Shown here piece after piece: positions 23,377 through 35,512 of a stretch of 64,000 nt of DNA. The notes under the pieces were generated by a model. The model made no database searches and was not told where the DNA came from. It saw only the letters and a list, made by a program, of their open reading frames with translations. Position numbers and translations under genes: made by a program. Numbering within the stretch: the stretch's first letter is position 1; every line of letters starts with the position of its first letter. Origin of the DNA: Phaeosaccion multiseriatum (Eukaryota; Protista; Ochrophyta, other classes); the NCBI GenBank assembly GCA_965112735.1, contig OZ218950.1:3286001-3350000 (forward strand). The letters are read 5' to 3'.

Positions 23377-23812
23377 ATGATGAAGAGACCACGGAGCGCG
23401 CTGAAGGAGGAGCAGAGGAGGAGGCCTGTCGGGGTGGCAGCGGCTCTTCTTTGGTGCTACCTTCACAAACTTGCTGATGCTTGGGTTGGCCCAGCGAACT
23501 GGGGCTGCACGTCTCAAGAGGGCATGCACCTGCGCCGCAGCGGCAGCGTTGTCACCTCGGGCACTTTCGATTCTCGCGGTGAAGCTGATAGGAGGAGTCT
23601 TCGCCGAAACAGCAGCGGACAGAGTGGGGGCAACCGCAGACAAAGGTCGTCATCGCACGCCAGAGTAGGGGGGGAAACGGAGGCACTCGGAGTTGGAGGA
23701 ACGGTTGGTGGCCCGGCCAGACGTAGGTTCCTCGGATCAAGTGGGTCGCGGTTAGGGGTGCAGAGGGTAGGAACGATGGCCGTAGTACCCGCAGCAGCAG
23801 CAGAATCAGTAG

Positions 23813-23849
<37 letters not shown>

Positions 23850-26073
23850 TGCAGCAGCAGAAGTAGAGGTGATATCGGAAGAGGAGAGTGGCAAACTCTC
23901 GACGTCAACGGACCCGACGTCAACGGACCGCGCTGCACTTCTGATCCCACCACCGCGGGCTCTCGTATCGTTAAAAAAAAAGTGGCAGTGGCAGGACGAG
24001 CTAGAGGGGTACTCAAGACCGGGAGATGGAGCTGTGCGCCAGTATCTCGACACGGCCCTCAGCTCCCTCAGCAAGGAAGAGCTAGGGACTATGGGTGCCC
24101 ATCTGCACGGCAGCCAATTAGGGGTGGGGGCAGACTCGTGGTACTCCGTGGACGAGGCGCAAGTTCCGTCTGCGCTCTACTTGGAGCAGGTGCTGTTTTT
24201 CAAAACGCTTGGGCTTGGCCGTGCTGCAATCAGGGCAGTCTTGATCGTGCGATGTAAGCGCCTTTTCAGTGAGACGCCCGAATACCTGCGCAATCTGATG
24301 GGCCAGTTGGAGAACTATGTCAAGCTCACGCACCCGCAGATTGCTCAGCTGATGCTCCGGGACGCACGCCTGCTCTGCAGCAGCACCGACTCCATTGGCG
24401 ACGGCGATGGTGATGATAAGGGCAAAGTTTTTACCGTCCAGAGCCTGCAGCGGCTGAGGAGCAGCATCGGTCTGTCGAACGCCCAACTCTCGCGCCTCAT
24501 TTTGACGCTCCCCATCTTAAAGGCGCTGGCCGAGGACATGACCAGCACGGAGGTGAAGCCAAATCGGAAGAAGGTTCGCGACTTGCTGCAGCTGACCGTG
24601 CAAGAGGCGCTGGAGATGGAGCTCATGTATCCAGCCATGTTCAGCTTTCATGTGGATAAGTACCTCGTGCCCAAGCTGCAGTGGCTTCAGGACGTTATGC
24701 AGATTGACCGCAAACAGCTCAAAAAGGTCATCCGGCGAACGCCCTGCTTGACGGGTCTCTCCATCGAGAAGAACTTGCACCCTACCATGGAGGCCTTGAA
24801 GAAGGAGCTACGCTTGACCAACCTCGAGCTGGTCCGCATCATCCGACATGAGCCGGAAATACTCAATATGAGCTGGGACAACAATGTGCGCCCGAAGATC
24901 AAGTGGCTTCGCGACAGGCTCACTCTCACCGAGGCAGAGCTGCGCCGAATGGTGTCGATGTTCCCCAGTCTGTTGGTGTACAACGTGGAGACTAACATGA
25001 CGCGTAAAGTGGACTACCTGAGCATCGACCTCGGGCTCACACAAAAGTACGTCAAAAGGACCTTCAAGAGCTTCCCGGCCGTGTTTGGGTATTCCATCTT
25101 GGAGAATATGGAGCCCAAGCTGTGGTACCTGCAGCTGCGCCTCGGCTTCGAGTCTCGGGAGCAGACCATTCGGAGAACAGTCGTGACTCAGCCCGCGCTG
25201 TGGGGGCTCTCGCGGGCCAACATCGAGGCTAAGCTCTCTTTCTACGAGGAGGAGATGGGCGCGTCGCTGGAGCAGCTGCGCAGGTGCGTGAGTGTGTGCG
25301 GTGTGGTGTGGCGTGGTGTGGTTTTAAGGGGGAGGGGGGGGCGGGGTGTGGAGGCGTGGGCGACGTGCCTACGTTGTGCGCACTCTATTGCTTCGGGAAG
25401 GGGCAGGATAGGGCGGGCGGTTTCAGTTTTTTCTTTTATCTTTCTGAACTATTCTTCGTGCGGCGAAGTGCAAGGAGCTTTGCGCTTGCCGCTGTCACCA
25501 CCTTTCTTTCCATCATTCTCTCTTTGTCATCACCGCGCCCGCCAAGTGCATGCCTTCCTTCCGCTTCCTCATCTGCCTCTTCCCTCTGCCCCACCCTCCC
25601 CCGTTCTTTCCCTGCCTGCTCCCTCCGCTCCCTTCAGAACGATGACGGCCATGAGCACGAGTGTGGAACAGAGGCTACGCCCACGCGTGGCTTGCATGCG
25701 GCATGCCGGCATCACTCCCACCTACGTGCCCCATCGGAGCGTTGTCGCCAAGCTCACAGACAAGGCCTTCGACGAGTGGATGGTGGAGAACGAGGGGGTC
25801 AACCCGCGCCTGACGTATATGGAGTACCTCACGGTCTTTCTCGGGATGGAGCATGGCGAGGCATGTCGAGAGATGAGCGCCTACCCGCGGAGGTGGCCCT
25901 TCCTCGCGAGGAACGAGGGCGAGTGCGCGGCCTCCTTGGCCGACGGGAGGGACACGGGGAAGGAGGACGGCGGCGGTAGCGAGAAGACCAGGACACGGGT
26001 GGCTCATCGCCTGCTGCAGCCAGACGTGCCGTTGGATGACATCACCACGTGGTGGGAGAAGATCAGTACTTAG
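23377..26073 (+). CDS. mTERF-repeat protein 1 (organelle-targeted), with one in-frame intron at 25284-25637
   Basis: ~36-aa mTERF repeats (P...L..S...N..PK..WL...L.L). The 354-nt GT..AG intron is stopless, so the ORF track reads through it. The leader ...LADA|WVG resembles a plastid bipartite signal. Confidence 0.9.
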
Positions 26074-26302
26074 CAATCCTTTTGTAGTATATATAATATG
26101 TATGTATGTATAAGCTGGAGAGTAACAGCAGTAACTCAGAGAAGAAGGAAAGAGAGAAAGGAGGGGGGTATAAGCCAACAACCCCGGGGGGAATTTGACT
26201 TTAAGCTTGTCCGGCCCCTGCTCCCCTCCTCCTCCCCTCAACCGATCCTCAACCTCTCCCTCTTCTCTCCAGCGAGCAAAATGCCACAGTGAGCGGAGGA
26301 GT

Positions 26303-29128
26303 ATGAAAGTAGGAAGCATACTTGCTGTGTTAAGCTTCCTTCACAGTAGTGACCGAAACCACACGCGGGGTAGGCAATATGGGGTACGGGGGGTCGAGGG
26401 CTGGGCGACACAGCCCTCAGCCGCAGCAGCACCAGGGGAAGGAATCCGGAGGAGAGCAGGGTTTAGGAGACCGCGCTCTCCAGGCCGGCAGCAGCAGGGG
26501 GAGGAGGAGTGTCACCATGGGCAGCGACTCTTCGCCAGACAGCAGTACAATCGCCTTTCGTACATGGCCTCTGAATATGAGGACGAGCCGGAGGTGTTGG
26601 AGATGACACCCAAGGTGGAGTGGCTCAGAGACAAGCTCAACCTGAGCGAGCATGAAGTCTCCAAGATTTTCATCTACCACCCTCAGATATCGGCGCTGAG
26701 TATTGAGACCACCGTGGCTCCCAAGCTGTTGTGGTTGGAGGAGAAACTGGGTTTGACTCCAGAGCAGCTGTCGAGGATGGTGGTGCGGCTACCGCAGATT
26801 TTGGATTATAGCATCGAAAAGAACATGGCGCCCAAGATGGTCTGGATGGAGAATGATCTGGGGCTTAGTAAGGCCCAGGTGGCCAAGGTGCTGCGATCTC
26901 GGCCTGCCATTCTGTCGTGTAGCGTGGAGGAGAACCTCGAGCCCAAGGTGGAGTTTTTTCGGCGGGAGCTGGGCATTTCACCCGAGCAGCTGATCAAGAT
27001 GGTGACCAAGGAGCCTGCCCTGCTGTCATATAGTCTGCAGGACAATATCTCGCCCAAGGTGGCGTGGCTGGTCCGCGAGCTGCGGATGAGTAAGGCGGAG
27101 GTGGCCAAGGTGGTGTCCACGTGCCCCGAAGTCCTTCGCTGCAGCATTCAGGACACCATGGCCCCCAAAGTGCTGTGGCTGTTGCGAAATCTGGGGCTGA
27201 CGCGCCAGCAGGTGGCCAAAATGTTGGTGAAAGTGCCCTCCATCTTGGCCTACAGCATCTCCGACAACCTCCACCCCAAGCTGGTGTGGCTCAAGGACGA
27301 ACTGGGCTTGTCCCCTGCCGCCCTCGTCAAGATGGTGCGCACGCTGCCCAATATCCTCTGCTACAGCATCTCCGACAATATGCAGCCGAAGCTGGACTGG
27401 CTCAACACAGAGCTGGGCCTCAACCCTCAGCAGGTGTCGAAGATGGTGGTACGCTATCCCAACATTTTTGCCTACAGTATTGAAGAGAACATGCAGCCCA
27501 AGCTCGACTGGATGGAGAATGAGCTCGGCATTAAGCCGGAGAGAGTCGCGAAAATGGTCACGGCGTTCCCCTCGATTTTCAGCTATAGCATTGAAAGGAA
27601 CATGAAGCCCAAAGTGGAGTGGATGGAGGACAAGCTGGGCCTCACCCGAGAGCAAGTGGTGGCGATTTTGATTCACAACCCCAACATTTTCATTTACAGT
27701 GAGGAGGACAACCTCGACCCCAAGATGGAGTGGATGAGAGACCACTTGTGCCTCAGCACGGAGCAGGTGTCCCGCATCATGACGCAAAACCCCAAAGTAC
27801 TGGGCTTGAGCATCACCACCAACCTGCAGCCCAAGATGGACTTTTTCCAGACCACCTTCGGGATGGACTCTCTGCAGGAGGCGGCGCAGCTCACAGTGGC
27901 CAAGATCCCTGCCATGTGGTCGCTGTCGTTTGTCAACATCCAGGAAAAGCTCGACTTTTACGCCAAGGAGCTGGGGGCGGACACCCCGGAGAAGCTACGG
28001 ATGGTCATCCCTACCATGTCGGCAAGTGTGGAGCAGCGCTTGCGACCCCGTGCTGCCGCAGTGCGAGCGGCCGGCATCACGCTGTCTATGGAGCATCTCA
28101 CGCTTGTGTCCAACTATCCTGCGCCCAGATTTGAGACGTGGTTGGTGAAGCACGGGAACGGTCGGAGGCTGCCATACGTGGAGTACCTCACCAGTTACGC
28201 AGAGCCGCGTCTCAATGCGGAGGCGGCGGCAGCAGCGATGCTCAAATTCCCGGACAGGTGGCCTTTCTTGGCGAGGGAAGGGGAGGTTCGGGCAAAGGCA
28301 AAGGTAAAAAAGGCGAAGGCGAAGGTCAAGACCAAGGCAAAGGCAAAGGCCAAGCCCAAGGCCAGGGCCAAGGTCAAGGCGAGTATTAGTATGGGTAGTG
28401 GCAGAGGCAGTGGGGACGATGCTTTAGAGGGGACTGCTGCCAGCCTTAGCAGTAGCAGCGCCAGCATCAGCACCGGCACCACCACCACCACCACCACCAC
28501 CAGGAAGGTAAAGGCAGGGAAGAAGAAGGTGCAAGAGAGTTTGGCGTGTTTGGCGGCGGCCGCTGTGGTTGGGGCGGCCACCGCACCGAATGAAGAGGGG
28601 GCGGACCTCGCTTTGCCAGAGGCGACCGCCATTGCTGAGGCGACAACTTGCTTGGTGGCAAGGAGAACAGCGGCAGCGGCAGCAGCAGCAGCAGCAGAGG
28701 CTGCAGCAGAGGGAGGAGGGGCGGCAGCGGCAGTTACAGGAGGGGCAAGAGCGGGATCTGCGGCAGTGGTGTTGGGGGCGGAAGGGGCAAAGAAGGTACC
28801 TGCGAAGAAGCCGCGGAAGGCCCAAGTCAAGGCGGTTGGGGCGAAGAAGCTTGCTGTGAAGAAGGTCACCGTAAAAAAGCCGAGAAAGGCGCCCAAGAAG
28901 AAGACAGCATTAGAAACAACAGCGGCAGCAGCAGTAGCAGGAGCAACAGCAGCACCAGCAGGGGATGTAGTGCCGGTGAAGAAGGTCACGAGATCGGCCA
29001 AGCCTGCGGCCAAGCCCCGCGCGAGGAAGCAGCAGCCCCTGGCCACGAAGAAGGAGAAGAAGGCAGCGGTTCGGCCGAGGAAGAAGAGCCCAGTGGCAAT
29101 GGTGGCGTCAGCGGAGGCGGAAGCGTGA
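26303..29128 (+). CDS. mTERF-repeat protein 2 with a histone-H1-like Lys/Ala/Pro-rich C-terminal tail
   Basis: About 12 regular 36-aa repeats (P.IL.YSIE.N..PK..W....LGL...QV.KM), followed by a tail with KAKAK, KKVPAKKPRK and KKPRKAPKKK. Confidence 0.93.
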   Translation: MKVGSILAVLSFLHSSDRNHTRGRQYGVRGVEGWATQPSAAAAPGEGIRRRAGFRRPRSPGRQQQGEEECHHGQRLFARQQYNRLSYMASEYEDEPEVLEMTPKVEWLRDKLNLSEHEVSKIFIYHPQISALSIETTVAPKLLWLEEKLGLTPEQLSRMVVRLPQILDYSIEKNMAPKMVWMENDLGLSKAQVAKVLRSRPAILSCSVEENLEPKVEFFRRELGISPEQLIKMVTKEPALLSYSLQDNISPKVAWLVRELRMSKAEVAKVVSTCPEVLRCSIQDTMAPKVLWLLRNLGLTRQQVAKMLVKVPSILAYSISDNLHPKLVWLKDELGLSPAALVKMVRTLPNILCYSISDNMQPKLDWLNTELGLNPQQVSKMVVRYPNIFAYSIEENMQPKLDWMENELGIKPERVAKMVTAFPSIFSYSIERNMKPKVEWMEDKLGLTREQVVAILIHNPNIFIYSEEDNLDPKMEWMRDHLCLSTEQVSRIMTQNPKVLGLSITTNLQPKMDFFQTTFGMDSLQEAAQLTVAKIPAMWSLSFVNIQEKLDFYAKELGADTPEKLRMVIPTMSASVEQRLRPRAAAVRAAGITLSMEHLTLVSNYPAPRFETWLVKHGNGRRLPYVEYLTSYAEPRLNAEAAAAAMLKFPDRWPFLAREGEVRAKAKVKKAKAKVKTKAKAKAKPKARAKVKASISMGSGRGSGDDALEGTAASLSSSSASISTGTTTTTTTTRKVKAGKKKVQESLACLAAAAVVGAATAPNEEGADLALPEATAIAEATTCLVARRTAAAAAAAAAEAAAEGGGAAAAVTGGARAGSAAVVLGAEGAKKVPAKKPRKAQVKAVGAKKLAVKKVTVKKPRKAPKKKTALETTAAAAVAGATAAPAGDVVPVKKVTRSAKPAAKPRARKQQPLATKKEKKAAVRPRKKSPVAMVASAEAEA

Positions 29129-29862
29129 GGGCAGCACTCACTCACGCACGCACGCACTCACTCACTCACTTGGAGGGCCTCCGGTCTGAGTTGCGATTGC
29201 GTTGGCGCTCCCCCCAGGAGGGTCTGCTGCCTTTAGAAGTCCTGCTGTGCCTTGGCCCACAGGCACGTGTGTGTATATATATACATAGTTTTAGCTTCAT
29301 TTTTTAATTTCATTTAAGAGTAAAACCTGGATGAACGGACAGCTAATCGGTTTTGCTGCTAACTCTGAAGGATACAGGTTGTTTGAGGTTCCGATGGCTT
29401 TATTGTGCCTCCCTTACCTATGGCTACTCTGGACGCTGAGCAGAAATTCACACGCACCTCTGGAAAGTGGAAAAAGGGGGGGGGGGGGGCGAGGGGGGGG
29501 CCATTTTCCCAGCGGACAGACACCCAATTCCCTTACGTGCCGTACTTATGTAAGGATGTGACGTACTTACGTAAGTATGCGACGCACTTACGTAAGCTTC
29601 TAAAAGTAATATCTATTGATGACCGGTTTTGGTGGGGCGAGATGCCCCACTCGGTGAAAGTGGGTATTTTTAGTACCCAATTTTTTTAAAAGTGGGTATT
29701 TTTAGTACAGTACCCAATATGGACCAGTAGCGCCCCTTCCCCCCCCCCTCCTTTTTTTGTGTGTGTGTCTGCCCCTGCTACAGGGGAAAATATACTACGC
29801 TATGATATGACGATATAATGGTATTACCACGATAACAATGGTATTCATATTTACAGACACAC

Positions 29863-30180
29863 TTAGTGTCCGTCCTCAATCATGCATGGCTTACAGTAGT
29901 AGTCAAAATCGCCTTCCACAAAACCCTTGCTGTCGCAAAACTCGACGGTGCACATGTGGTGCACGAGGTTTCCACACGCTCTTTCGGATGGGCAGAGGAA
30001 CAGCTTGACTTGCGAGGGCTTAGTACAGCCATACGAGCATGTGAAGGCCATGTCTCCCTCTCTCAAGCCGCCCAACGACGGCGCTGCTGACGCGGCAGCA
30101 GCGGCAGTAGCGGCCGCAGCGGCCGCATCAGAGGCAGCAGCAGAAGCAGCATCAGAAGCAGTACCAGTACCAGTACGCTG
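29863..30180 (-). CDS. PHD-like (C4HC3) zinc-finger module, -1 frame continuation of the recombinase
   Basis: QRTGTG...FTCSYGC...LFLCPSERACGNLVHHMC...YYCKPC*. It joins the recombinase frame if the A8 run at 30181-30188 is read as A9 or slipped -1. Confidence 0.65.
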   Translation of the reverse strand, partial: QRTGTGTASDAASAAASDAAAAAATAAAAASAAPSLGGLREGDMAFTCSYGCTKPSQVKLFLCPSERACGNLVHHMCTVEFCDSKGFVEGDFDYYCKPCMIEDGH

Positions 30181-32913
30181 TTTTTTTTGGGCCCCCCTTC
30201 CCCCACCCCTTCCTCCTCGTCCTCCTCCGGCTCCGCCTCCTCCTGTTGCAGCAGCAGCAGCAGCAGCAGCATTGCTGCTGCCACCTCCTCCTCGTCGTCC
30301 TCTGCACCGCTATCACCTCCATCCCCCTCCTTCGACTCGTCTGCACCAGTGCCACTTTCCTTCGCCCTCGCCCGCTTCGCCCGTTTTTTCGCGTCCGCCT
30401 GCTGCGCGCTCCATAAAATATACACGGTGGTCCACACCAGCTGATTGAAGCGGCGCTTGTGAGAATCAGAACGAGACTTGATGTCAAAGGCGTCTTTGAC
30501 TGCGTCAAACATGCTTCGCGCTTCTTCAAGCGTCGGCTTGTCCTTCCAGAGCCCCTTTTCTTTCGCCGCGGATTCAATCGCACCCATCAAACAGCAAAAT
30601 TTTGACATCCTTCGCTTCTCCGCCCTCCCCTGCACGTCTGCTGTCGTGAATTCTCGAAGGCGAGGAGTGCCTGTCATCCAAGCATCCCAAGCAGCGCGCA
30701 CAGTGAAGCTAGGGACCTCAAAGTGCTCGGGAAGGGTATGCCACCGGCCGTTGTAGAGATACAGAGGTGGCTGATCTGCACCTGCACAAGAAGAAGAAGA
30801 GGGCGGGGCGCTGCTCGAACCCTCACCAAGGCCCAGAGTGCCTGCCTGGTGAGCCGCGAGAAGGTCGCTGAGCCCACTCTTAGAAAAGGCTGCGTCGAGG
30901 GTCGTCTGCAGGGCCCTGCTCACACCCAGACTGGTGACAGTGCCAGAGGCCTGTGCATTCTCCTCCAGAACGTCACGGATCAGCGTCTCCAAGTCGACCT
31001 TGATCGTCTGGCCCAACACCTCAAGCTTGCCGCCTAGAGAGGCCACGCTGTCCGCCACGACTTGGAATTGCCTCAGCTGCACGACGTGGGGAGGAATCCC
31101 GGTTGCAGAAATCTCGTCCGTCTCGTCCGGATACTTCAGCACGACATGCTCTGAAAGGTCCGCCAGCAACCTTTGATCTCGGAAGAGCTGTGTCGTGAAA
31201 AGAGGGTGATTCTCCTGAAGAGTGCTGCGCAGAAAGCCGGCGTGGTACACCACACTGGCAAGACAGAATTCAGCCACCTTCCTCAATCTCAGCGGCACGT
31301 CCCTGAAGCAGCTCACAATGGCTCCCGCGAGCACGTCTTCAATGCCCTCCTTCGCTGTGCCGTCCACCTTGAGGCGCTGAAAAAAGGGAGGAAGCAATGC
31401 AAACTCCTTCGCTGAGATGTTCGCCCCGGAGGCAGCCCGGCCCACATACTGATCTGCTGCATTGATGGGGTTGAAGTAGATGCCCTGGACGCCGGGAAGA
31501 GACCATCCCATTCGAAGTTGCACAGCAATTGGGTTGGGAGCAGCGGACGAGCCGCTTGTGACGTGCGAGGCAGCGCCCTTGCGCCCAGAATGAGTGCCGA
31601 GGTCCTCTGGAGTCAGCCCCATGCCTTCCAAAATGGACGAGTTCGCCGCCGCCGTACGTCTGAGGAAGCCGCAATACCTATCGTACTGATTGTTGCCAGC
31701 GAACAGCGCGTTCTTCTCAAAACCAAAGCTCAGGAGGTAAACACCAAGCGCGAGGACGGGGCAGATCTCCGGCATGATTGGATTCGCGTAGACGTGGCGA
31801 GGATGTCGGGCCTTCTCTCCCAGCTGGTCGCCCTTTTGCTTCCCAAAATAGACGCAGAGCGCGTCCCCCTTCCACTCGAGATGATCGAGACAAATCTCCA
31901 CACAGTTGGTGGCGCGGCACATCAGATTCCAGGAGAGAACGAGGAAGGGGTGGCCAAAGGCGCCCTGTCTGTGCCCGTTCTCACAGACTGCCGAGCTCAG
32001 CATTGCTGCGATGTACACAAGCGAAGGAAACAGTGGCAACCAAAGACGGCGTCAGGGCTAGGAAGTGAGTGGGGGGCAGTCAATGCATCAGCCACTTGTC
32101 TCCACCCACTCCACTAGTTTCCACTGTCCACTGACTCCACACAGCTGGGAATTTACCTTTGGCAAGAGCGCGGTAGAGAGCGAACGGCATGGGAGCCTTC
32201 CCTTCTCTGACTTCGACATTTCCCTCCTGCTTCTCTCCTGCGATCGTCCTCTTCAGCCCCTTGGTGAGCGTCGCAAGGTCGCTTTGCAATTTGCGGTGCT
32301 GCTCCTCCTGATGGTAGTCTCTGTACAGATTGAAGAGTGCAGAGCGTTTCGACTGTGCACCGGCCTTGGATAAGCCCTTCGGCCCCTTCTTGACTTCAAG
32401 CAGCCACCCGAAGAACGCGTCGGCTGTCAGCAGATGGAACAGCAAAGGGTGCGGCGCCCGAGGTGCTTGGATCAAGTGTGCCTTCACCCGCTTCGTCCAC
32501 TGCGCCTCAGCCTTCTTCTTGGCCTTTGCTTGGGCTTTCGCTGCTCTCGACACCTCAGCCGGCGTCTGCTGTGCCGCTGCAGTGGCACCACCCGCTCCGC
32601 CAGGTGCGGCGGCTGCTGCGGCTGCTGCTGCTCTCCTCTGTGCTTCCTCCTCTTCCCCATCTTCCCCGTCTTCCTCCTCTTCCCCCTCCGGTGGAGCAAA
32701 TGCTGTCCTGAAGTCAGGGTCCAGAAGCTCCGGGTGCTTGCGGAAGACGTATCGGATCAGCATCGTGGAGGCGCATGCATATCCACTTCTCGAGCGTGGG
32801 GCGATGGTGTTGTTTCGGGGGTTCTGAATCTGCTGCTGCTCTGCAGTAAGCGGTGCTTCTTCCCCCTCTGCTGCTGGTGCTTCCGGAACCGTAGCAACAG
32901 CGACGTCAGCCAT
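30063..32913 (-). CDS. CryptonS-type tyrosine recombinase, ~899 aa
   Basis: Exons 32913-32157 and 32005-30063 (151-nt GT-AG intron, phase 1, giving ALAK|AMLSS). Catalytic set: SWNLMCR (R), KQKGDQ (K), GTHSGRKG (H..R), RMGW (W) and VQGIY (Y). Also RHVYANP..PEICPVLAL, DQYVGR and FALLPPFF, typical of stramenopile Cryptons. Confidence 0.9.
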
Positions 32914-33569
32914 GGTATACTCTGTTCTCCTGCAAATTCACGTGGGAGATGCCCCTCCCACCACTGGCATCAGCTGTTACAGCCGGGTATCGTCCGCGCA
33001 GCCGCTGCTCCTCTTACATAGCTGCACTGTGCAAATATGCTGATGCTGTGAATGAAATAAACTCCACGTGGGGAGGGGGGGGAGAATGCCCCACAACCAA
33101 AAAATATTGGATAAAAAACTTGAAAAACGAGCATTTATGGCCCATAAAATATCCAAAACAATTATTTCGTGGGGCAGGTGCCCCACTTCACGGTACTATT
33201 AGACATACGGACTACAGAGAACTTTTCCCATTTCTCTGATTCTATGATCCCTTAGTAACTTACTCCCGACTTCTAAAGGTGGCAATGTGTTCGTAAGAGG
33301 CAGGGCCAAGACAGGGAGGCAAGTACGGCGCCAGTAGTGGCTAAAGAAGAAAAAGGGGGGGGGGGGGGGGGGGGGGGGTAGGCCCTGTCCGCAAAACGGG
33401 TGTGTCCGCCCATCCAGGTTTTACTCTTAATTCTAATTTTTTAAAATTAAAACAAATAATTACACGGCCGGGTCCCAACCGCTCACAGATCGATACTCAC
33501 GCTGGACACACAACAGGTGAACAAAAGGGACCGATGTTCGGCCCGGAGCATATCCCAGAGCCGTAAGAT

Positions 33570-35146
33570 ATGGGACCAAATAGCAATAAGAGGGGGGGTG
33601 GAGCAAAGCCTGCGGGGCCTGCGAGAGCAAGGTTCTCTAACTGGAAGCCACCCTCCAAAGACAAGCCGAAGGCGAAACCAGCAGGAGGAGGAAGGGGAGG
33701 AGGCCGCGGAGGTGGAGGCGGGGGTCGCGGGGGAGGGGGTGGGGGAAGGGATGGCGGGGGGAGAGGAGGAGGAAGGGGGGGCGGAGGAGGAGGCAGGGGG
33801 GGAGGAGGGGGGACGAAGCCCTCGGGGGCCCTTGTCGCGTCACTGAAGGACGCAGTGGAGCGAGGAGCGACCACAGGCATGACGGTGGCATCCACGGAGG
33901 TAAGGGTCGGGAGGAGAGTATAGCACGGGCCTTCATTGGAGGGAGGACCATACAGGCCTCGAGAAGTTATTTTTTTTTTGTTGTTCCAGACCAGCTTAGG
34001 TGTCCGCATTCCTTCATCGCCTCTTTCTCTTCCTCCTCCTCGCTGACTGCCCCCCTCCCCAACTCCCCCTGTCTTAGGCGGGCACCGCGCTGCTCAAGAA
34101 GGTGGGCGACTTGGCCGCGTTGGAGGAGATCAAAATTCCAGAGAAGGAGTGGCAGCACGTCTTCGCCTTGCTCAAGGGAATGGGCATGTTTACCGGAGAC
34201 GATGATGACACCGACGGCGACGGGCAGGGGGGCGGGGACGGAGGCAGGGGTGTCGAGGACAGTAGCAGGGGCGACGGAAAGGCTATTACGAGCGGTGTTC
34301 GGGCTGAAGAAGAGCAGCAGCAGCAGCAGCAGCAGCAGGAAGCCAACGACGCTGTCAAGGATTCGGCGCTGTTTGCCTACCTCACCTCGCACATGAGTTT
34401 CGAGGCCAAGCACGCGGTGGAGGCCCTCTCGGCCACCTCTGGGGAGGACCTGGGGGAGGCGCTGGACTATCTGTGCCTGCACTTGGGGGAGAAGGAGCTG
34501 CAGAGGGGGTTTCAGAAGAAGAGCGTGTCCCTCAAGCAGGGGGAGAAGCAGAAGGCGATACAGCTCATGAAGGAGCAGCAGAGCAAGCAAGAGCAACAGA
34601 GAAAACAGGATATTAACAGTGGGAGCAGCAACAGCAAAGGAGACAAGGCGGCAAAGAGCCATAGCAGTGGCGGCGGGAAACAGCAACAGCAGCAACAGCA
34701 GAGAAAGGCGGTAGTGGTCAAGAAGCCCGCCGCCGTAGAGCTTGTTGACGTGGACCGGCTGGACTTCGCCGGGAGGAATAGGGAGATGACGCTGCTGCGC
34801 CTGGGCTTCAGCCAGAGAGAGGTGGCCGCCGCCCTGGCCCCTTCGTCGTCATCCCCACCTGCAGCGTCTACATCTGGCGACGTACTGGATGATGACATGC
34901 TGCTGTGCTATCTGCTGGCAGGGGCGCGTGGACCCCGGGGGGGAAGCGGCAGCCTGAATCGCGTGCCTGCCACTGCTGTGATGCAAGAAGAAGCCTCTGT
35001 GCTTGAGGCCATCCTCGAGGTAAGAGCGGAGAGATGATGACATGAGGTGTGGGCACAGGGTGGGGTTGGGGAGGGGAGGGCCAGCACATTCATTAGAGGG
35101 GAGAAGGGGGGCAGGTGGAGTTCGACGGGAGATGTGATCTCCCCTT

Positions 35147-35179
<33 letters not shown>

Positions 35180-35512
35180 CCCACACACACTTGTCTCTCC
35201 CCCCTCTTGTAACTGTATCTCTCTCACTCTATCCCACAATACTCTCGCCCCTCATCTCTATCTTTCTCTCCCTCTCCCACACACACAATCTACCCTCTCC
35301 CTCCCTCCCTCCTCCCCTCCCTCCCCCCCTCCCTCTCCCTCCGTCTCCAGGGCTCCTTCGTGAAGGTGCACGATCGGCGGTACGAGCTGACCATCGACCT
35401 CGGAATCAGTCAAGAGGACTCCACTTTGGTGGCCCTCTTTCCCTCCGGTGGCGGCAAGACTTATCCCGAAACAGCTCCAGCGCTCCTGCTCATGAACGAC
35501 TCACTTCCGCCG

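What the first reader, a model, noticed from the sequence alone, without database searches (positions are those of the whole stretch)
29863..30200. PHD-like finger joined to the recombinase through a -1 shift at A AAA AAC
Seen: the recombinase frame reads CCC AAA AAA AAC and then degenerates into poly-Leu. The -1 frame continues PKKKQR (NLS-like), an Ala linker and a C4HC3-pattern finger (CSYGC..CPSERAC..HHMC..CKPC). Established: A AAA AAC is a canonical -1 slippery heptamer, and PHD fingers read histone tails. Inference: this may be a chromatin-targeting Crypton recombinase, possibly made in two isoforms. Caveats: no strong stimulatory hairpin was seen at the usual spacing, and this assembly seems to have other homopolymer errors, so A9 may be the true sequence. 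The recombinase-PHD fusion would still stand in that case.
Basis: partly seen in the sequence, partly recalled or inferred. Interest (0 to 1): 0.75.

Follow-up and report, generated by a model that had tools for sequence, protein, structure and literature searches.

The report
Broken Crypton copy, no programmed frameshift
This is one slightly damaged copy of a young, many-copy Crypton-type jumping gene whose recombinase normally carries its cysteine-rich zinc-finger tail in the same reading frame. The apparent frameshift at the A-run comes from a single missing G about 100 bases upstream, not from a programmed ribosomal slip.

Summary

- 24 copies read recombinase, linker and finger as one open frame, with A8 in frame (GCC CAA AAA AAA CAG).
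- The window copy and 5 others lack one G of a GGG run (window 30287-30288), 99 nt upstream of the A-run.
- A7 and A9 each occur once, and both break the frame.
- An 81%-identical old relative keeps GGG and has no A-run at all.

So there is no programmed -1 frameshift, and A9 is not the true sequence.

The fusion itself is real. The element (29613-33223, 3611 bp, two exons) is a CryptonS-like tyrosine-recombinase transposon. Its 36-39% identical relatives, oomycete and environmental, end before the tail.

The tail's eight zinc ligands are invariant in a second repeat family here. It matches no PHD model, however, and could not be folded, so it is PHD-like in layout only.

Earlier reports of this scan already describe this family, with its zinc-finger tail, from other copies in this genome.

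The parts
29613..33223 (-). Whole Crypton-like element (3611 bp), 5'-AGTTCTC...CAATAG-3', no TIR, no consistent target-site duplication
   Evidence: 33 full-length copies at 98-100% identity share exactly this span. Flanks differ between copies and are locally AT-rich, with +2 = T in 25 of 29.
32157..32913 (-). Exon 1 (252 codons plus 1 base): N-terminal, core-binding-like part of the recombinase
   Evidence: Open in 28 of the 29 copies where it could be located. Aligns to residues 10-52 and 66-179 of Phytophthora nicotianae protein P0013, E 5e-16.
32006..32156 (-). Predicted intron (151 nt, GTAAAT...pyrimidine tract...CAG, phase 1)
   Evidence: Read from the sequence. Its length is 151 nt in 29 of the 30 loci examined and one base shorter in L033. 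It joins exon 1 to exon 2 without a gap relative to P0013. Inferred, no transcript seen here.
30289..32005 (-). Exon 2, intact part: catalytic domain, conserved Crypton C-terminal region, basic patch, acidic stretch
   Evidence: 38% identity over 524 aa to P0013, E 6e-109. 180 homologues at E<=1e-3.
31476..31916 (-). Catalytic residues R30 (31914-31916), H138 (31590-31592), R141 (31581-31583), W167 (31503-31505), Y176 (31476-31478), in exon-2 numbering
   Evidence: R30, R141, W167 and Y176 are invariant and H138 is conserved in at least 90% of a 25-sequence alignment of homologues.
30360..30389 (-). Basic patch KKRAKRARAK (NLS-like, inferred)
   Evidence: Direct reading. Lies just past the point where homologues end.
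30287..30288 (-). Site of the frame-breaking lesion: GG here, GGG in intact copies
   Evidence: Alignments of copies. State table of all copies: 6 of 33 copies carry it.
30181..30188 (-). A8 run, in frame as CAA AAA AAA in intact copies; not a programmed slip site
   Evidence: A8 in 31 of 33 copies. A7 and A9 occur once each and both are out of frame. Replaced by AAGAGGAGGAGAAC in the 81% relative L066.
30076..30286 (-). Low-complexity linker (Gly/Ala/Arg, then Thr/Gly/Ala/Ser) with a (GCT)7-16 microsatellite
   Evidence: All 9 frame-breaking lesions between recombinase and finger are +/-1 changes in its homopolymer runs.
29866..30075 (-). C-terminal C4HC3 Cys/His module; ligand codons span 29884-30039; stop codon at 29863-29865
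   Evidence: C13, C17, C28, C34, H39/H40, C42, C61 and C64 are invariant across two repeat families at 35-42% identity. Absent from all 120 listed homologues.
33169..33186 (-). 5' subterminal palindrome GTGGGGC-N4-GCCCCAC
   Evidence: Direct reading. Role as a recombinase-binding site is inferred only.
29632..29650 (-). 3' subterminal palindrome GTGGGGC-N5-GCCCCAC
   Evidence: Direct reading. Role inferred only.

Best explanation
Window 29613-33223 (minus strand) is one copy of a young, roughly 33-copy CryptonS-like DNA transposon. Its single two-exon gene encodes a tyrosine recombinase.

By analogy with other Cryptons, the recombinase presumably excises the element as a circle and re-integrates it by site-specific recombination. 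No inverted repeats or target duplications are made. This mechanism is inferred, not shown here.

In the functional form the protein continues in one frame past the point where all retrieved relatives stop. It runs through a basic NLS-like patch, an acidic stretch and a Gly/Ala/Arg linker that includes the codons CAA AAA AAA. It ends in a 50-residue C4HC3 module that most likely binds two zinc ions.

The window copy has lost one G from a GGG run 99 nt upstream of the A-run. This may be a real mutation or a base-calling error. Either way, its annotated frame runs out of register through the linker and stops before the finger. The match of A AAA AAC to a slippery heptamer in that wrong frame is coincidental.

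What the finger does is not shown. My best guess is that it is a PHD-like or related cross-brace zinc module that tethers the recombinase to chromatin, DNA or a host protein.
For: Copy number and boundaries: (33 full-length copies, 98-100% identity).

Frame states:
- 24 of 33 copies are in frame with GGG, G6 and A8.
- 6 copies carry the GG deletion, including the window copy.
- One copy each has G5, A7 or A9, and all three are out of frame.

Outgroup: the 81% relative L066 keeps GGG. It reads the linker and basic patch in one frame and has no A-run.

Recombinase identity:
- 180 homologues, the best 36-39% identical, from Phytophthora, Globisporangium, Aphanomyces and environmental eukaryotes.
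- R30, R141, W167 and Y176 are invariant, and H138 is conserved in at least 90% of the aligned homologues.
- Homologues give weak Phage_int_SAM_4 and Phage_integrase hits.
- The nearest Atlas clusters are NDC10_II, Tyr recombinase and DUF3504, scores 0.91-0.96.
- CryptonS is described from oomycetes and a diatom in PMC3212892.

Gene model: exon 1 and exon 2 align collinearly to P0013.

Tail is an addition: P0013 ends 11 residues after the position aligned to residue 530, and none of 120 homologues has a Cys-rich tail.

Tail is constrained: all ligand positions are invariant in a second family.
Against: - No reads or transcripts were available, so I cannot say whether the missing G is a mutation or an assembly error, nor confirm the intron.
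- The copies are so similar that conservation of A8 within the family carries little weight either way.
- In the GG-deletion copies a -1 slip at A AAA AAC would in principle restore the finger frame, so low-level rescue cannot be excluded.
- Zinc binding, the fold and any targeting role of the tail are untested. Both AlphaFold runs failed (pLDDT 44 and 39).
Confidence: 0.9

Rival explanations
1. One reading: programmed -1 ribosomal frameshifting at A AAA AAC joins the recombinase to the finger and gives two isoforms.
For: In the window copy the heptamer is in the correct phase (X XXY YYZ) and the -1 frame holds the finger. A stable GC-rich hairpin lies downstream (-59 kcal/mol, z -2.96).
Against: - 24 of 33 copies need no shift.
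- The out-of-frame state is explained by a 1-bp deletion 99 nt upstream.
- The A-run is absent from the 81% relative.
- The large hairpin starts about 25 nt after the heptamer, not at the usual 5-9 nt (the spacing rule is established knowledge). It is made of the GCN repeats of the Ala linker.
- A7 and A9 variants occur, as expected for an unconstrained homopolymer.
Confidence: 0.03
2. The missing G, and the other +/-1 homopolymer differences, are base-calling or assembly errors. On this view the window copy is really intact.
For: All 9 frame-breaking differences between recombinase and finger are +/-1 changes in G or A runs within about 110 nt of low-complexity sequence. The GG state occurs on two different subfamily backgrounds, which fits recurrent error as well as recurrent mutation.
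Against: - A 3-base run is short for systematic homopolymer error.
- Only 6 of 33 otherwise near-identical copies show it.
- Three GG copies (on contigs C6, C4 and C14) carry further damage, as expected for decaying lineages.
- Window copy L032 and copy L031 are identical over 3611 bp, including the deletion, but sit in different flanks. This fits inheritance through transposition.
Confidence: 0.3
3. The tail is not a PHD finger. It could be another two-zinc cross-brace module, for example RING-CH-like, which is also C4HC3. Or it could be a lineage-specific zinc ribbon that binds DNA or a host protein rather than histone tails.
For: - No PF00628 match at E<=10.
- None of the 89 PHD matches in the genome falls on any Crypton finger, while true PHDs here score 1e-11.
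- hhalign against this genome's PHDs gives E 0.08 over 19 columns only.
- The first two Cys pairs are spaced x3/x5 and x5/x4 rather than the x2 and x2-4 of PHD fingers.
Against: - The C4-x4-H-x2-C spacing and an aromatic residue two positions before the seventh ligand fit PHD rather than RING-CH (consensus spacings from general knowledge).
- All ten best named Atlas neighbours are PHD clusters, though at scores of 0.80-0.88 that count as a lead only.
Confidence: 0.4

Closest known systems
CryptonS elements of oomycetes and a diatom (Kojima and Jurka 2011, PMC3212892)
   Same: - Single tyrosine-recombinase gene with no reverse transcriptase.
- No TIRs or LTRs.
- Size of about 3-4 kb.
- A conserved region C-terminal to the catalytic domain.
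- Closest proteins are from Phytophthora, Globisporangium and Aphanomyces (36-39% identity, E down to 1e-102).
   Different: - Carries an extra tail of about 180 residues (basic patch, low-complexity linker, C4HC3 finger) that none of the 120 listed relatives has.
- Termini are AGTTC...CAATAG, not the TATGG reported for most CryptonS.
- Copy number is about 33, whereas Cryptons are usually low-copy (PMC3212892).
PHD finger (Pfam PF00628)
   Same: C4HC3 ligand order. C4-x4-H-x2-C core. Aromatic residue at -2 from the seventh ligand. All eight ligands can be put in register with this genome's own PHD fingers.
   Different: No HMM match at any threshold tried. Longer first and second knuckles. 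Fold not demonstrated. No relatives in 1.84 billion representative proteins apart from two spurious satellite ORFs.
Chromodomain-bearing integrases of chromoviruses (Ty3/gypsy), from my own knowledge and not tested here
   Same: A transposon-encoded recombination enzyme with an appended C-terminal small module, which in chromoviruses directs integration to particular chromatin.
   Different: Different enzyme class (DDE integrase versus tyrosine recombinase) and different module. No targeting evidence here beyond locally AT-rich insertion sites.
-1 programmed ribosomal frameshift sites (X XXY YYZ plus a downstream structure)
   Same: A AAA AAC is in phase in the mutated frame of this copy.
   Different: The two-frame arrangement is not the family's normal state. 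The site is not conserved in the diverged relative. No structure lies at the canonical spacing.

Membership tests
Crypton (tyrosine-recombinase DNA transposon) | Tyrosine-recombinase catalytic residues R...H-x-x-R...[H/W]...Y | tested here: met
   R30, R141, W167 and Y176 are invariant and H138 is conserved in at least 90% of 25 aligned homologues. All are present in the window copy (31476-31916).
Crypton (tyrosine-recombinase DNA transposon) | The recombinase is the only gene of the mobile unit, with no RT/RNase H as in DIRS or Ngaro and no DDE transposase | tested here: met
   The repeated unit is 3611 bp and is filled by one two-exon gene. Pfam finds nothing else.
Crypton (tyrosine-recombinase DNA transposon) | No TIRs or LTRs; short direct repeats at the termini as recombination substrates | tested here: inconclusive
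   No TIR or LTR at the copy-defined ends. Only an AG dinucleotide, often AGTT, recurs at both junctions. No empty site was available to define the crossover.
CryptonS subgroup | Sequence kinship with oomycete/diatom Crypton recombinases, including the conserved C-terminal region | tested here: met
   38% identity over 524 aa to a Phytophthora nicotianae protein, E 6e-109, running to that protein's C-terminus. Repbase CryptonS consensus sequences themselves were not available to compare.
CryptonS subgroup | TATGG termini (the majority of CryptonS, PMC3212892) | tested here: not met
   Termini are AGTTCTC...CAATAG in all copies.
PHD finger (PF00628) | C4HC3 ligand order | tested here: met
   Seven Cys and the His pair are invariant across two families and in register with genuine PHDs.
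PHD finger (PF00628) | Canonical spacing C-x2-C ... C-x2-4-C-x4-5-H-x2-C ... C-x2-C | tested here: inconclusive
   C4-x4-H-x2-C and the final C-x2-C fit. The first pair is x3 (x5 in the paralogue) and the second pair is x5 (x4 in the paralogue).
PHD finger (PF00628) | Match to the family HMM at or above its gathering score | tested here: not met
   No hit at E<=10. No Crypton finger is among the 89 genome-wide PF00628 matches at E<=1. Positive control: a PHD of this genome scores 45 bits.
PHD finger (PF00628) | Interleaved two-zinc cross-brace fold | tested here: inconclusive
   AlphaFold2 mean pLDDT was 44 for the single sequence and 39 with the 8-row alignment. The models were unusable, so no fold search was run.
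PHD finger (PF00628) | Binding of histone H3 tails | not testable with these tools
   Needs peptide-binding assays.
Programmed -1 ribosomal frameshift | Slippery heptamer X XXY YYZ in the zero frame | tested here: met
   A AAA AAC is in phase in the window copy's shifted frame. This is coincidental given the rows below.
Programmed -1 ribosomal frameshift | The two-frame arrangement is the conserved, functional state of the gene | tested here: not met
   24 of 33 copies are a single ORF. The window copy's state is caused by a 1-bp deletion at 30287-30288.
Programmed -1 ribosomal frameshift | The slippery site is conserved in diverged relatives | tested here: not met
   The 81% relative L066 has AAGAGGAGGAGAAC in place of the A-run.
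Programmed -1 ribosomal frameshift | Stimulatory structure 5-9 nt downstream | tested here: not met
   The large hairpin begins about 25 nt downstream. Only a weak 7-bp stem starts 2 nt after the site.

The most novel reading that the evidence does not exclude
The C4HC3 tail is a genuine reader or tethering module, PHD-like or a new cross-brace zinc finger, that steers integration by a Crypton tyrosine recombinase. It has also been exchanged between two unrelated repeat families of this genome. A much weaker extra reading is that slippage on the A8 run modulates how much finger-bearing protein is made.
Probability: 0.2. Interest if true: 0.6.

Novelty: new variant of a known kind. Interest (0 to 1): 0.3.

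Why it matters
The headline claim, a programmed frameshift in a eukaryotic DNA transposon, would have been remarkable, but copy comparison explains it away. This is a useful caution: in a multi-copy family, a frame break next to a homopolymer should be checked against sister copies before recoding is invoked.

What remains is modest but real. An active-looking CryptonS-like element has acquired a constrained two-zinc-type tail that its oomycete and environmental relatives lack, and a related tail sits on a second repeat family. If the tail guides integration, the element would offer a compact, naturally tethered tyrosine recombinase. It would also give a handle on how Cryptons, whose mechanism is still only inferred, choose their targets.

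Tried and rejected
- Pfam on the recombinase ORF, the N-terminal ORF and the finger gave nothing. PHROGs gave nothing useful.
- PDB searches by sequence with the finger, the finger profile and the recombinase profile gave only chance hits.
- The word search restricted to the finger region found nothing.
- The full HMMER search of 1.84 billion representatives with the finger returned two hits. Both are translated tandem satellites that add up weak repeats, so I rejected them as spurious.
- AlphaFold2 on the finger, alone and with the 8-row alignment, gave pLDDT 44 and 39. I did not run fold search, because such models give meaningless matches.
I used the loci already held, plus small later requests.
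- Literature searches for Crypton plus PHD finger, and for PHD-bearing integrases, found nothing relevant.
- I considered that the linker might be an intron that joins the frames. I rejected this because intact copies are one continuous ORF.
- The identity of the second finger-bearing repeat family could not be resolved. Pfam found nothing, and only a 570-bp 3' segment is shared among most copies.
- One alignment call failed through my own wrong coordinates.
Full report
**Observation.**
On the minus strand the long ORF 30063-32039 reads GGG CCC AAA AAA AAC and continues through Leu-rich sequence to a stop. The A-run is A8 at 30181-30188. The frame one base back reads AQKKQR, a Thr/Gly/Ala/Ser linker, and a 50-residue Cys/His module ending at the TAA at 29863-29865.

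**The frame break is not at the A-run.**
A DNA search of the window's own genome (67 Mb, 22 contigs) with 29863-30420 found 33 near-identical copies. A protein search with the recombinase showed that most copies have open frames of 728-737 residues, against 662 in the window copy.

I aligned the tails of the copies and tabulated every copy. The states are:

| State between recombinase and finger | Copies | Reading frame |
|---|---|---|
| GGG, G6, A8 | 24 | recombinase, linker and finger in one ORF |
| GG in place of GGG (window 30287-30288) | 6, including the window copy | broken |
| G5 in place of G6 | 1 | broken |
| A7 | 1 | broken |
| A9 | 1 | broken |

- In the 24 intact copies A8 is read in frame as GCC CAA AAA AAA CAG.
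- The missing G lies 99 nt upstream of the A-run.
The intact reading there is a Gly/Ala/Arg-rich linker.
- A decayed relative at 81% identity (L066) keeps GGG and reads the linker and basic patch in one frame. In place of the A-run it has AAGAGGAGGAGAAC, coding TKRRRT.
- Folding the RNA downstream gives a stable hairpin (z -2.96). It is built from the GCN repeats of the Ala linker and begins about 25 nt after the heptamer.

Together these results refute programmed -1 frameshifting. They also refute the fallback that A9 is the true sequence.

I cannot tell whether the missing G is a mutation or an assembly error. It occurs on two subfamily backgrounds, which fits either. However, the window copy and L031 are identical over 3611 bp, including the deletion, yet have different flanks. 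That favours a real, inherited lesion.

**What the element is.**
A search with 28800-35500 shows that the repeated unit is window 29613-33223, 3611 bp. Its ends are AGTTCTC...CAATAG in all copies. It has no terminal inverted repeats and no consistent target duplication. Its flanks are locally AT-rich, with T at position +2 in 25 of 29 copies.

The gene has two exons:
- Exon 1 runs from the ATG at 32913 to 32157.
- A 151-nt GTAAAT...CAG intron spans 32156-32006.
- Exon 2 starts at 32005.

The joined spliced protein was not built or searched. For the full exon 2, I used an intact sister copy (L037:1537-3675) rather than reading the window copy through its break.

Evidence for a Crypton-type tyrosine recombinase:
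- Exon 2 finds 180 homologues. The best are 36-39% identical and come from Phytophthora nicotianae, Globisporangium, Aphanomyces, EukProt transcriptomes and metagenomes.
- Exon 1 and exon 2 align collinearly to the Phytophthora protein P0013, which supports the intron model.
- In a 25-sequence alignment R30, R141, W167 and Y176 are invariant, and H138 is conserved in at least 90% of the sequences. This is the tyrosine-recombinase catalytic set.
- A few homologues give weak Phage_int_SAM_4 and Phage_integrase hits.
- The nearest named Atlas clusters are NDC10_II, Tyr recombinase and DUF3504/Phage_integrase, at scores of 0.91-0.96.

Kojima and Jurka (PMC3212892) describe CryptonS from oomycetes and a diatom. 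Those elements have a single recombinase gene, a conserved C-terminal region and short terminal direct repeats, mostly TATGG. This element fits except for its termini and its tail.

**The tail.**
P0013 ends 11 residues after the position aligned to residue 530 of exon 2. The protein here continues for about 180 more residues: the basic patch KKRAKRARAK, an acidic stretch, the linker and the finger. None of the 120 listed homologues has a Cys-rich C-terminus.

At the sequence level the finger is an orphan:
- Pfam finds nothing even at E<=10.
- A six-frame scan of the whole genome with PF00628 gives 89 matches, none at any Crypton finger. A genuine PHD of this genome scores E 1e-11 as a positive control.
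- PDB sequence and profile searches find nothing.
- The region-restricted word search finds nothing.
- The full search of 1.84 billion representatives returns only two translated satellites.

Within the genome, however, a second and older repeat family carries a 35-42% identical module at the C-terminus of its open frame. It lies on contigs C15, C8, C12, C14, C3, C2 and C1. C13, C17, C28, C34, H39/H40, C42, C61 and C64 are invariant between the two families, while the extra Cys of the window copy is not. That pattern argues for a real C4HC3 two-zinc module under constraint.

Evidence for a PHD fold specifically is weak:
- The Atlas neighbours are all PHD clusters, but at scores of 0.80-0.88, which count as a lead only.
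- hhalign against six PHD fingers of this genome aligns only the C3-C4-H-C5 core, at E 0.08.
- A joint alignment puts all eight ligands and an aromatic residue at -2 from the seventh ligand in register. Such Cys-driven alignments are descriptive, not statistical.
- The first two Cys pairs are more widely spaced than in PHD fingers.
- Both AlphaFold2 runs failed (pLDDT 44 and 39), so no fold comparison was made.

**Mechanism, with shown and inferred steps marked.**
- Shown: a young multi-copy element. One recombinase gene with intact catalytic residues. An in-frame C4HC3 tail in most copies. A 1-bp lesion in this copy.
- Inferred from the Crypton literature: excision as a circle and integration by site-specific recombination. 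The GTGGGGC...GCCCCAC palindromes near both ends (33169-33186 and 29632-29650) are candidate binding sites.
- Inferred from composition: the basic patch acts as a nuclear localisation signal.
- Speculative: the finger tethers the enzyme to chromatin, AT-rich DNA or a host factor.

**Comparison and novelty.**
The element is a CryptonS-like transposon with an added zinc-finger-type tail, which makes it a new variant of a known kind. I found no paper that links Cryptons with PHD fingers. The frameshift part of the finding is not a real feature.

Earlier reports of this scan on other copies of the same family reached the same view of the tail: PHD-like in layout, fold unproven.
- the copy-by-copy frame table,
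- the position of the lesion,
- the outgroup without an A-run,
- the second family that carries a related finger.

**Verdict.**
Observation partly confirmed. Interpretation partly supported: fusion yes, frameshift no, PHD unproven. Interest 0.3.

Noticed in passing
L061-L065 (G000 C8:3599069-3599233, C15:50215-50379, C12:2377588-2377752, C14:3292615-3292776; also C3:415100, C2:283571, C1:2428294): A second, older repeat family (73-93% identity between copies) ends in a 35-42% identical C4HC3 module preceded by a Gly-rich linker. Only a 570-bp 3' segment is shared by most copies. What enzyme, if any, it belongs to is unknown, and Pfam finds nothing.
   Followed up: partly
L068-L074 (G000 C3:609152, C3:503395, C4:4900206, C8:349475, C8:3455209, C13:327704, C16:2004275): Seven loci give the same PF00628 score (E 1.9e-11, 50.4 bits). 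Five of them have 485-aa open frames, the other two 225 and 279 aa. In L068 the PHD finger scores E 1e-11 on its own and a 302-aa ORF without any Pfam match lies downstream. This looks like another repeat family, one with a canonical PHD.
   Followed up: partly
window 30246-30270 and the same site in other copies: A (GCT)n microsatellite in the linker varies from 7 to 16 units between copies. It changes the length of an Ala run without breaking the frame.
   Followed up: yes
L035, L036, L042, L043 flanks (G000 C1 at 4.96 Mb, 3.109 Mb and 3.121 Mb): Several copies sit between homologous flanks (...CTTTC | element | TTTCTTCGGTGATTCC...). Either the element prefers one site in another repeat, or element and flank were duplicated together. 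L035 is a 5'-truncated copy 4.6 kb from L036.
   Followed up: no
window 29530-29600: Just outside the 3' end of the element the flank holds three ACTTACGTAAG-like palindromes. They are not part of the repeated unit, because other copies have unrelated flanks. The TIR/TTAA outer layer proposed for 29314-33430 is therefore not shared by the family.
   Followed up: partly
window 33169-33186 and 29632-29650; also 29655-29720: Subterminal palindromes GTGGGGC-N4/5-GCCCCAC lie near both ends, and TGGGTA-TTTTTA-GTACCCA palindromes lie near the 3' end. They are possible recombinase-binding sites.
   Followed up: no
window 23377-26073 and 26195-29128 (+): Two neighbouring long ORFs. The second is an mTERF-repeat protein (PF02536, E 1.6e-75) with a Lys/Ala-rich tail. 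The first looks like a paralogue by eye.
   Followed up: partly
L060 right flank (G000 C14 near 2.682 Mb): One copy is followed by a TA repeat and then CCCTAA units, that is, telomere-like repeats at an internal position.
   Followed up: no
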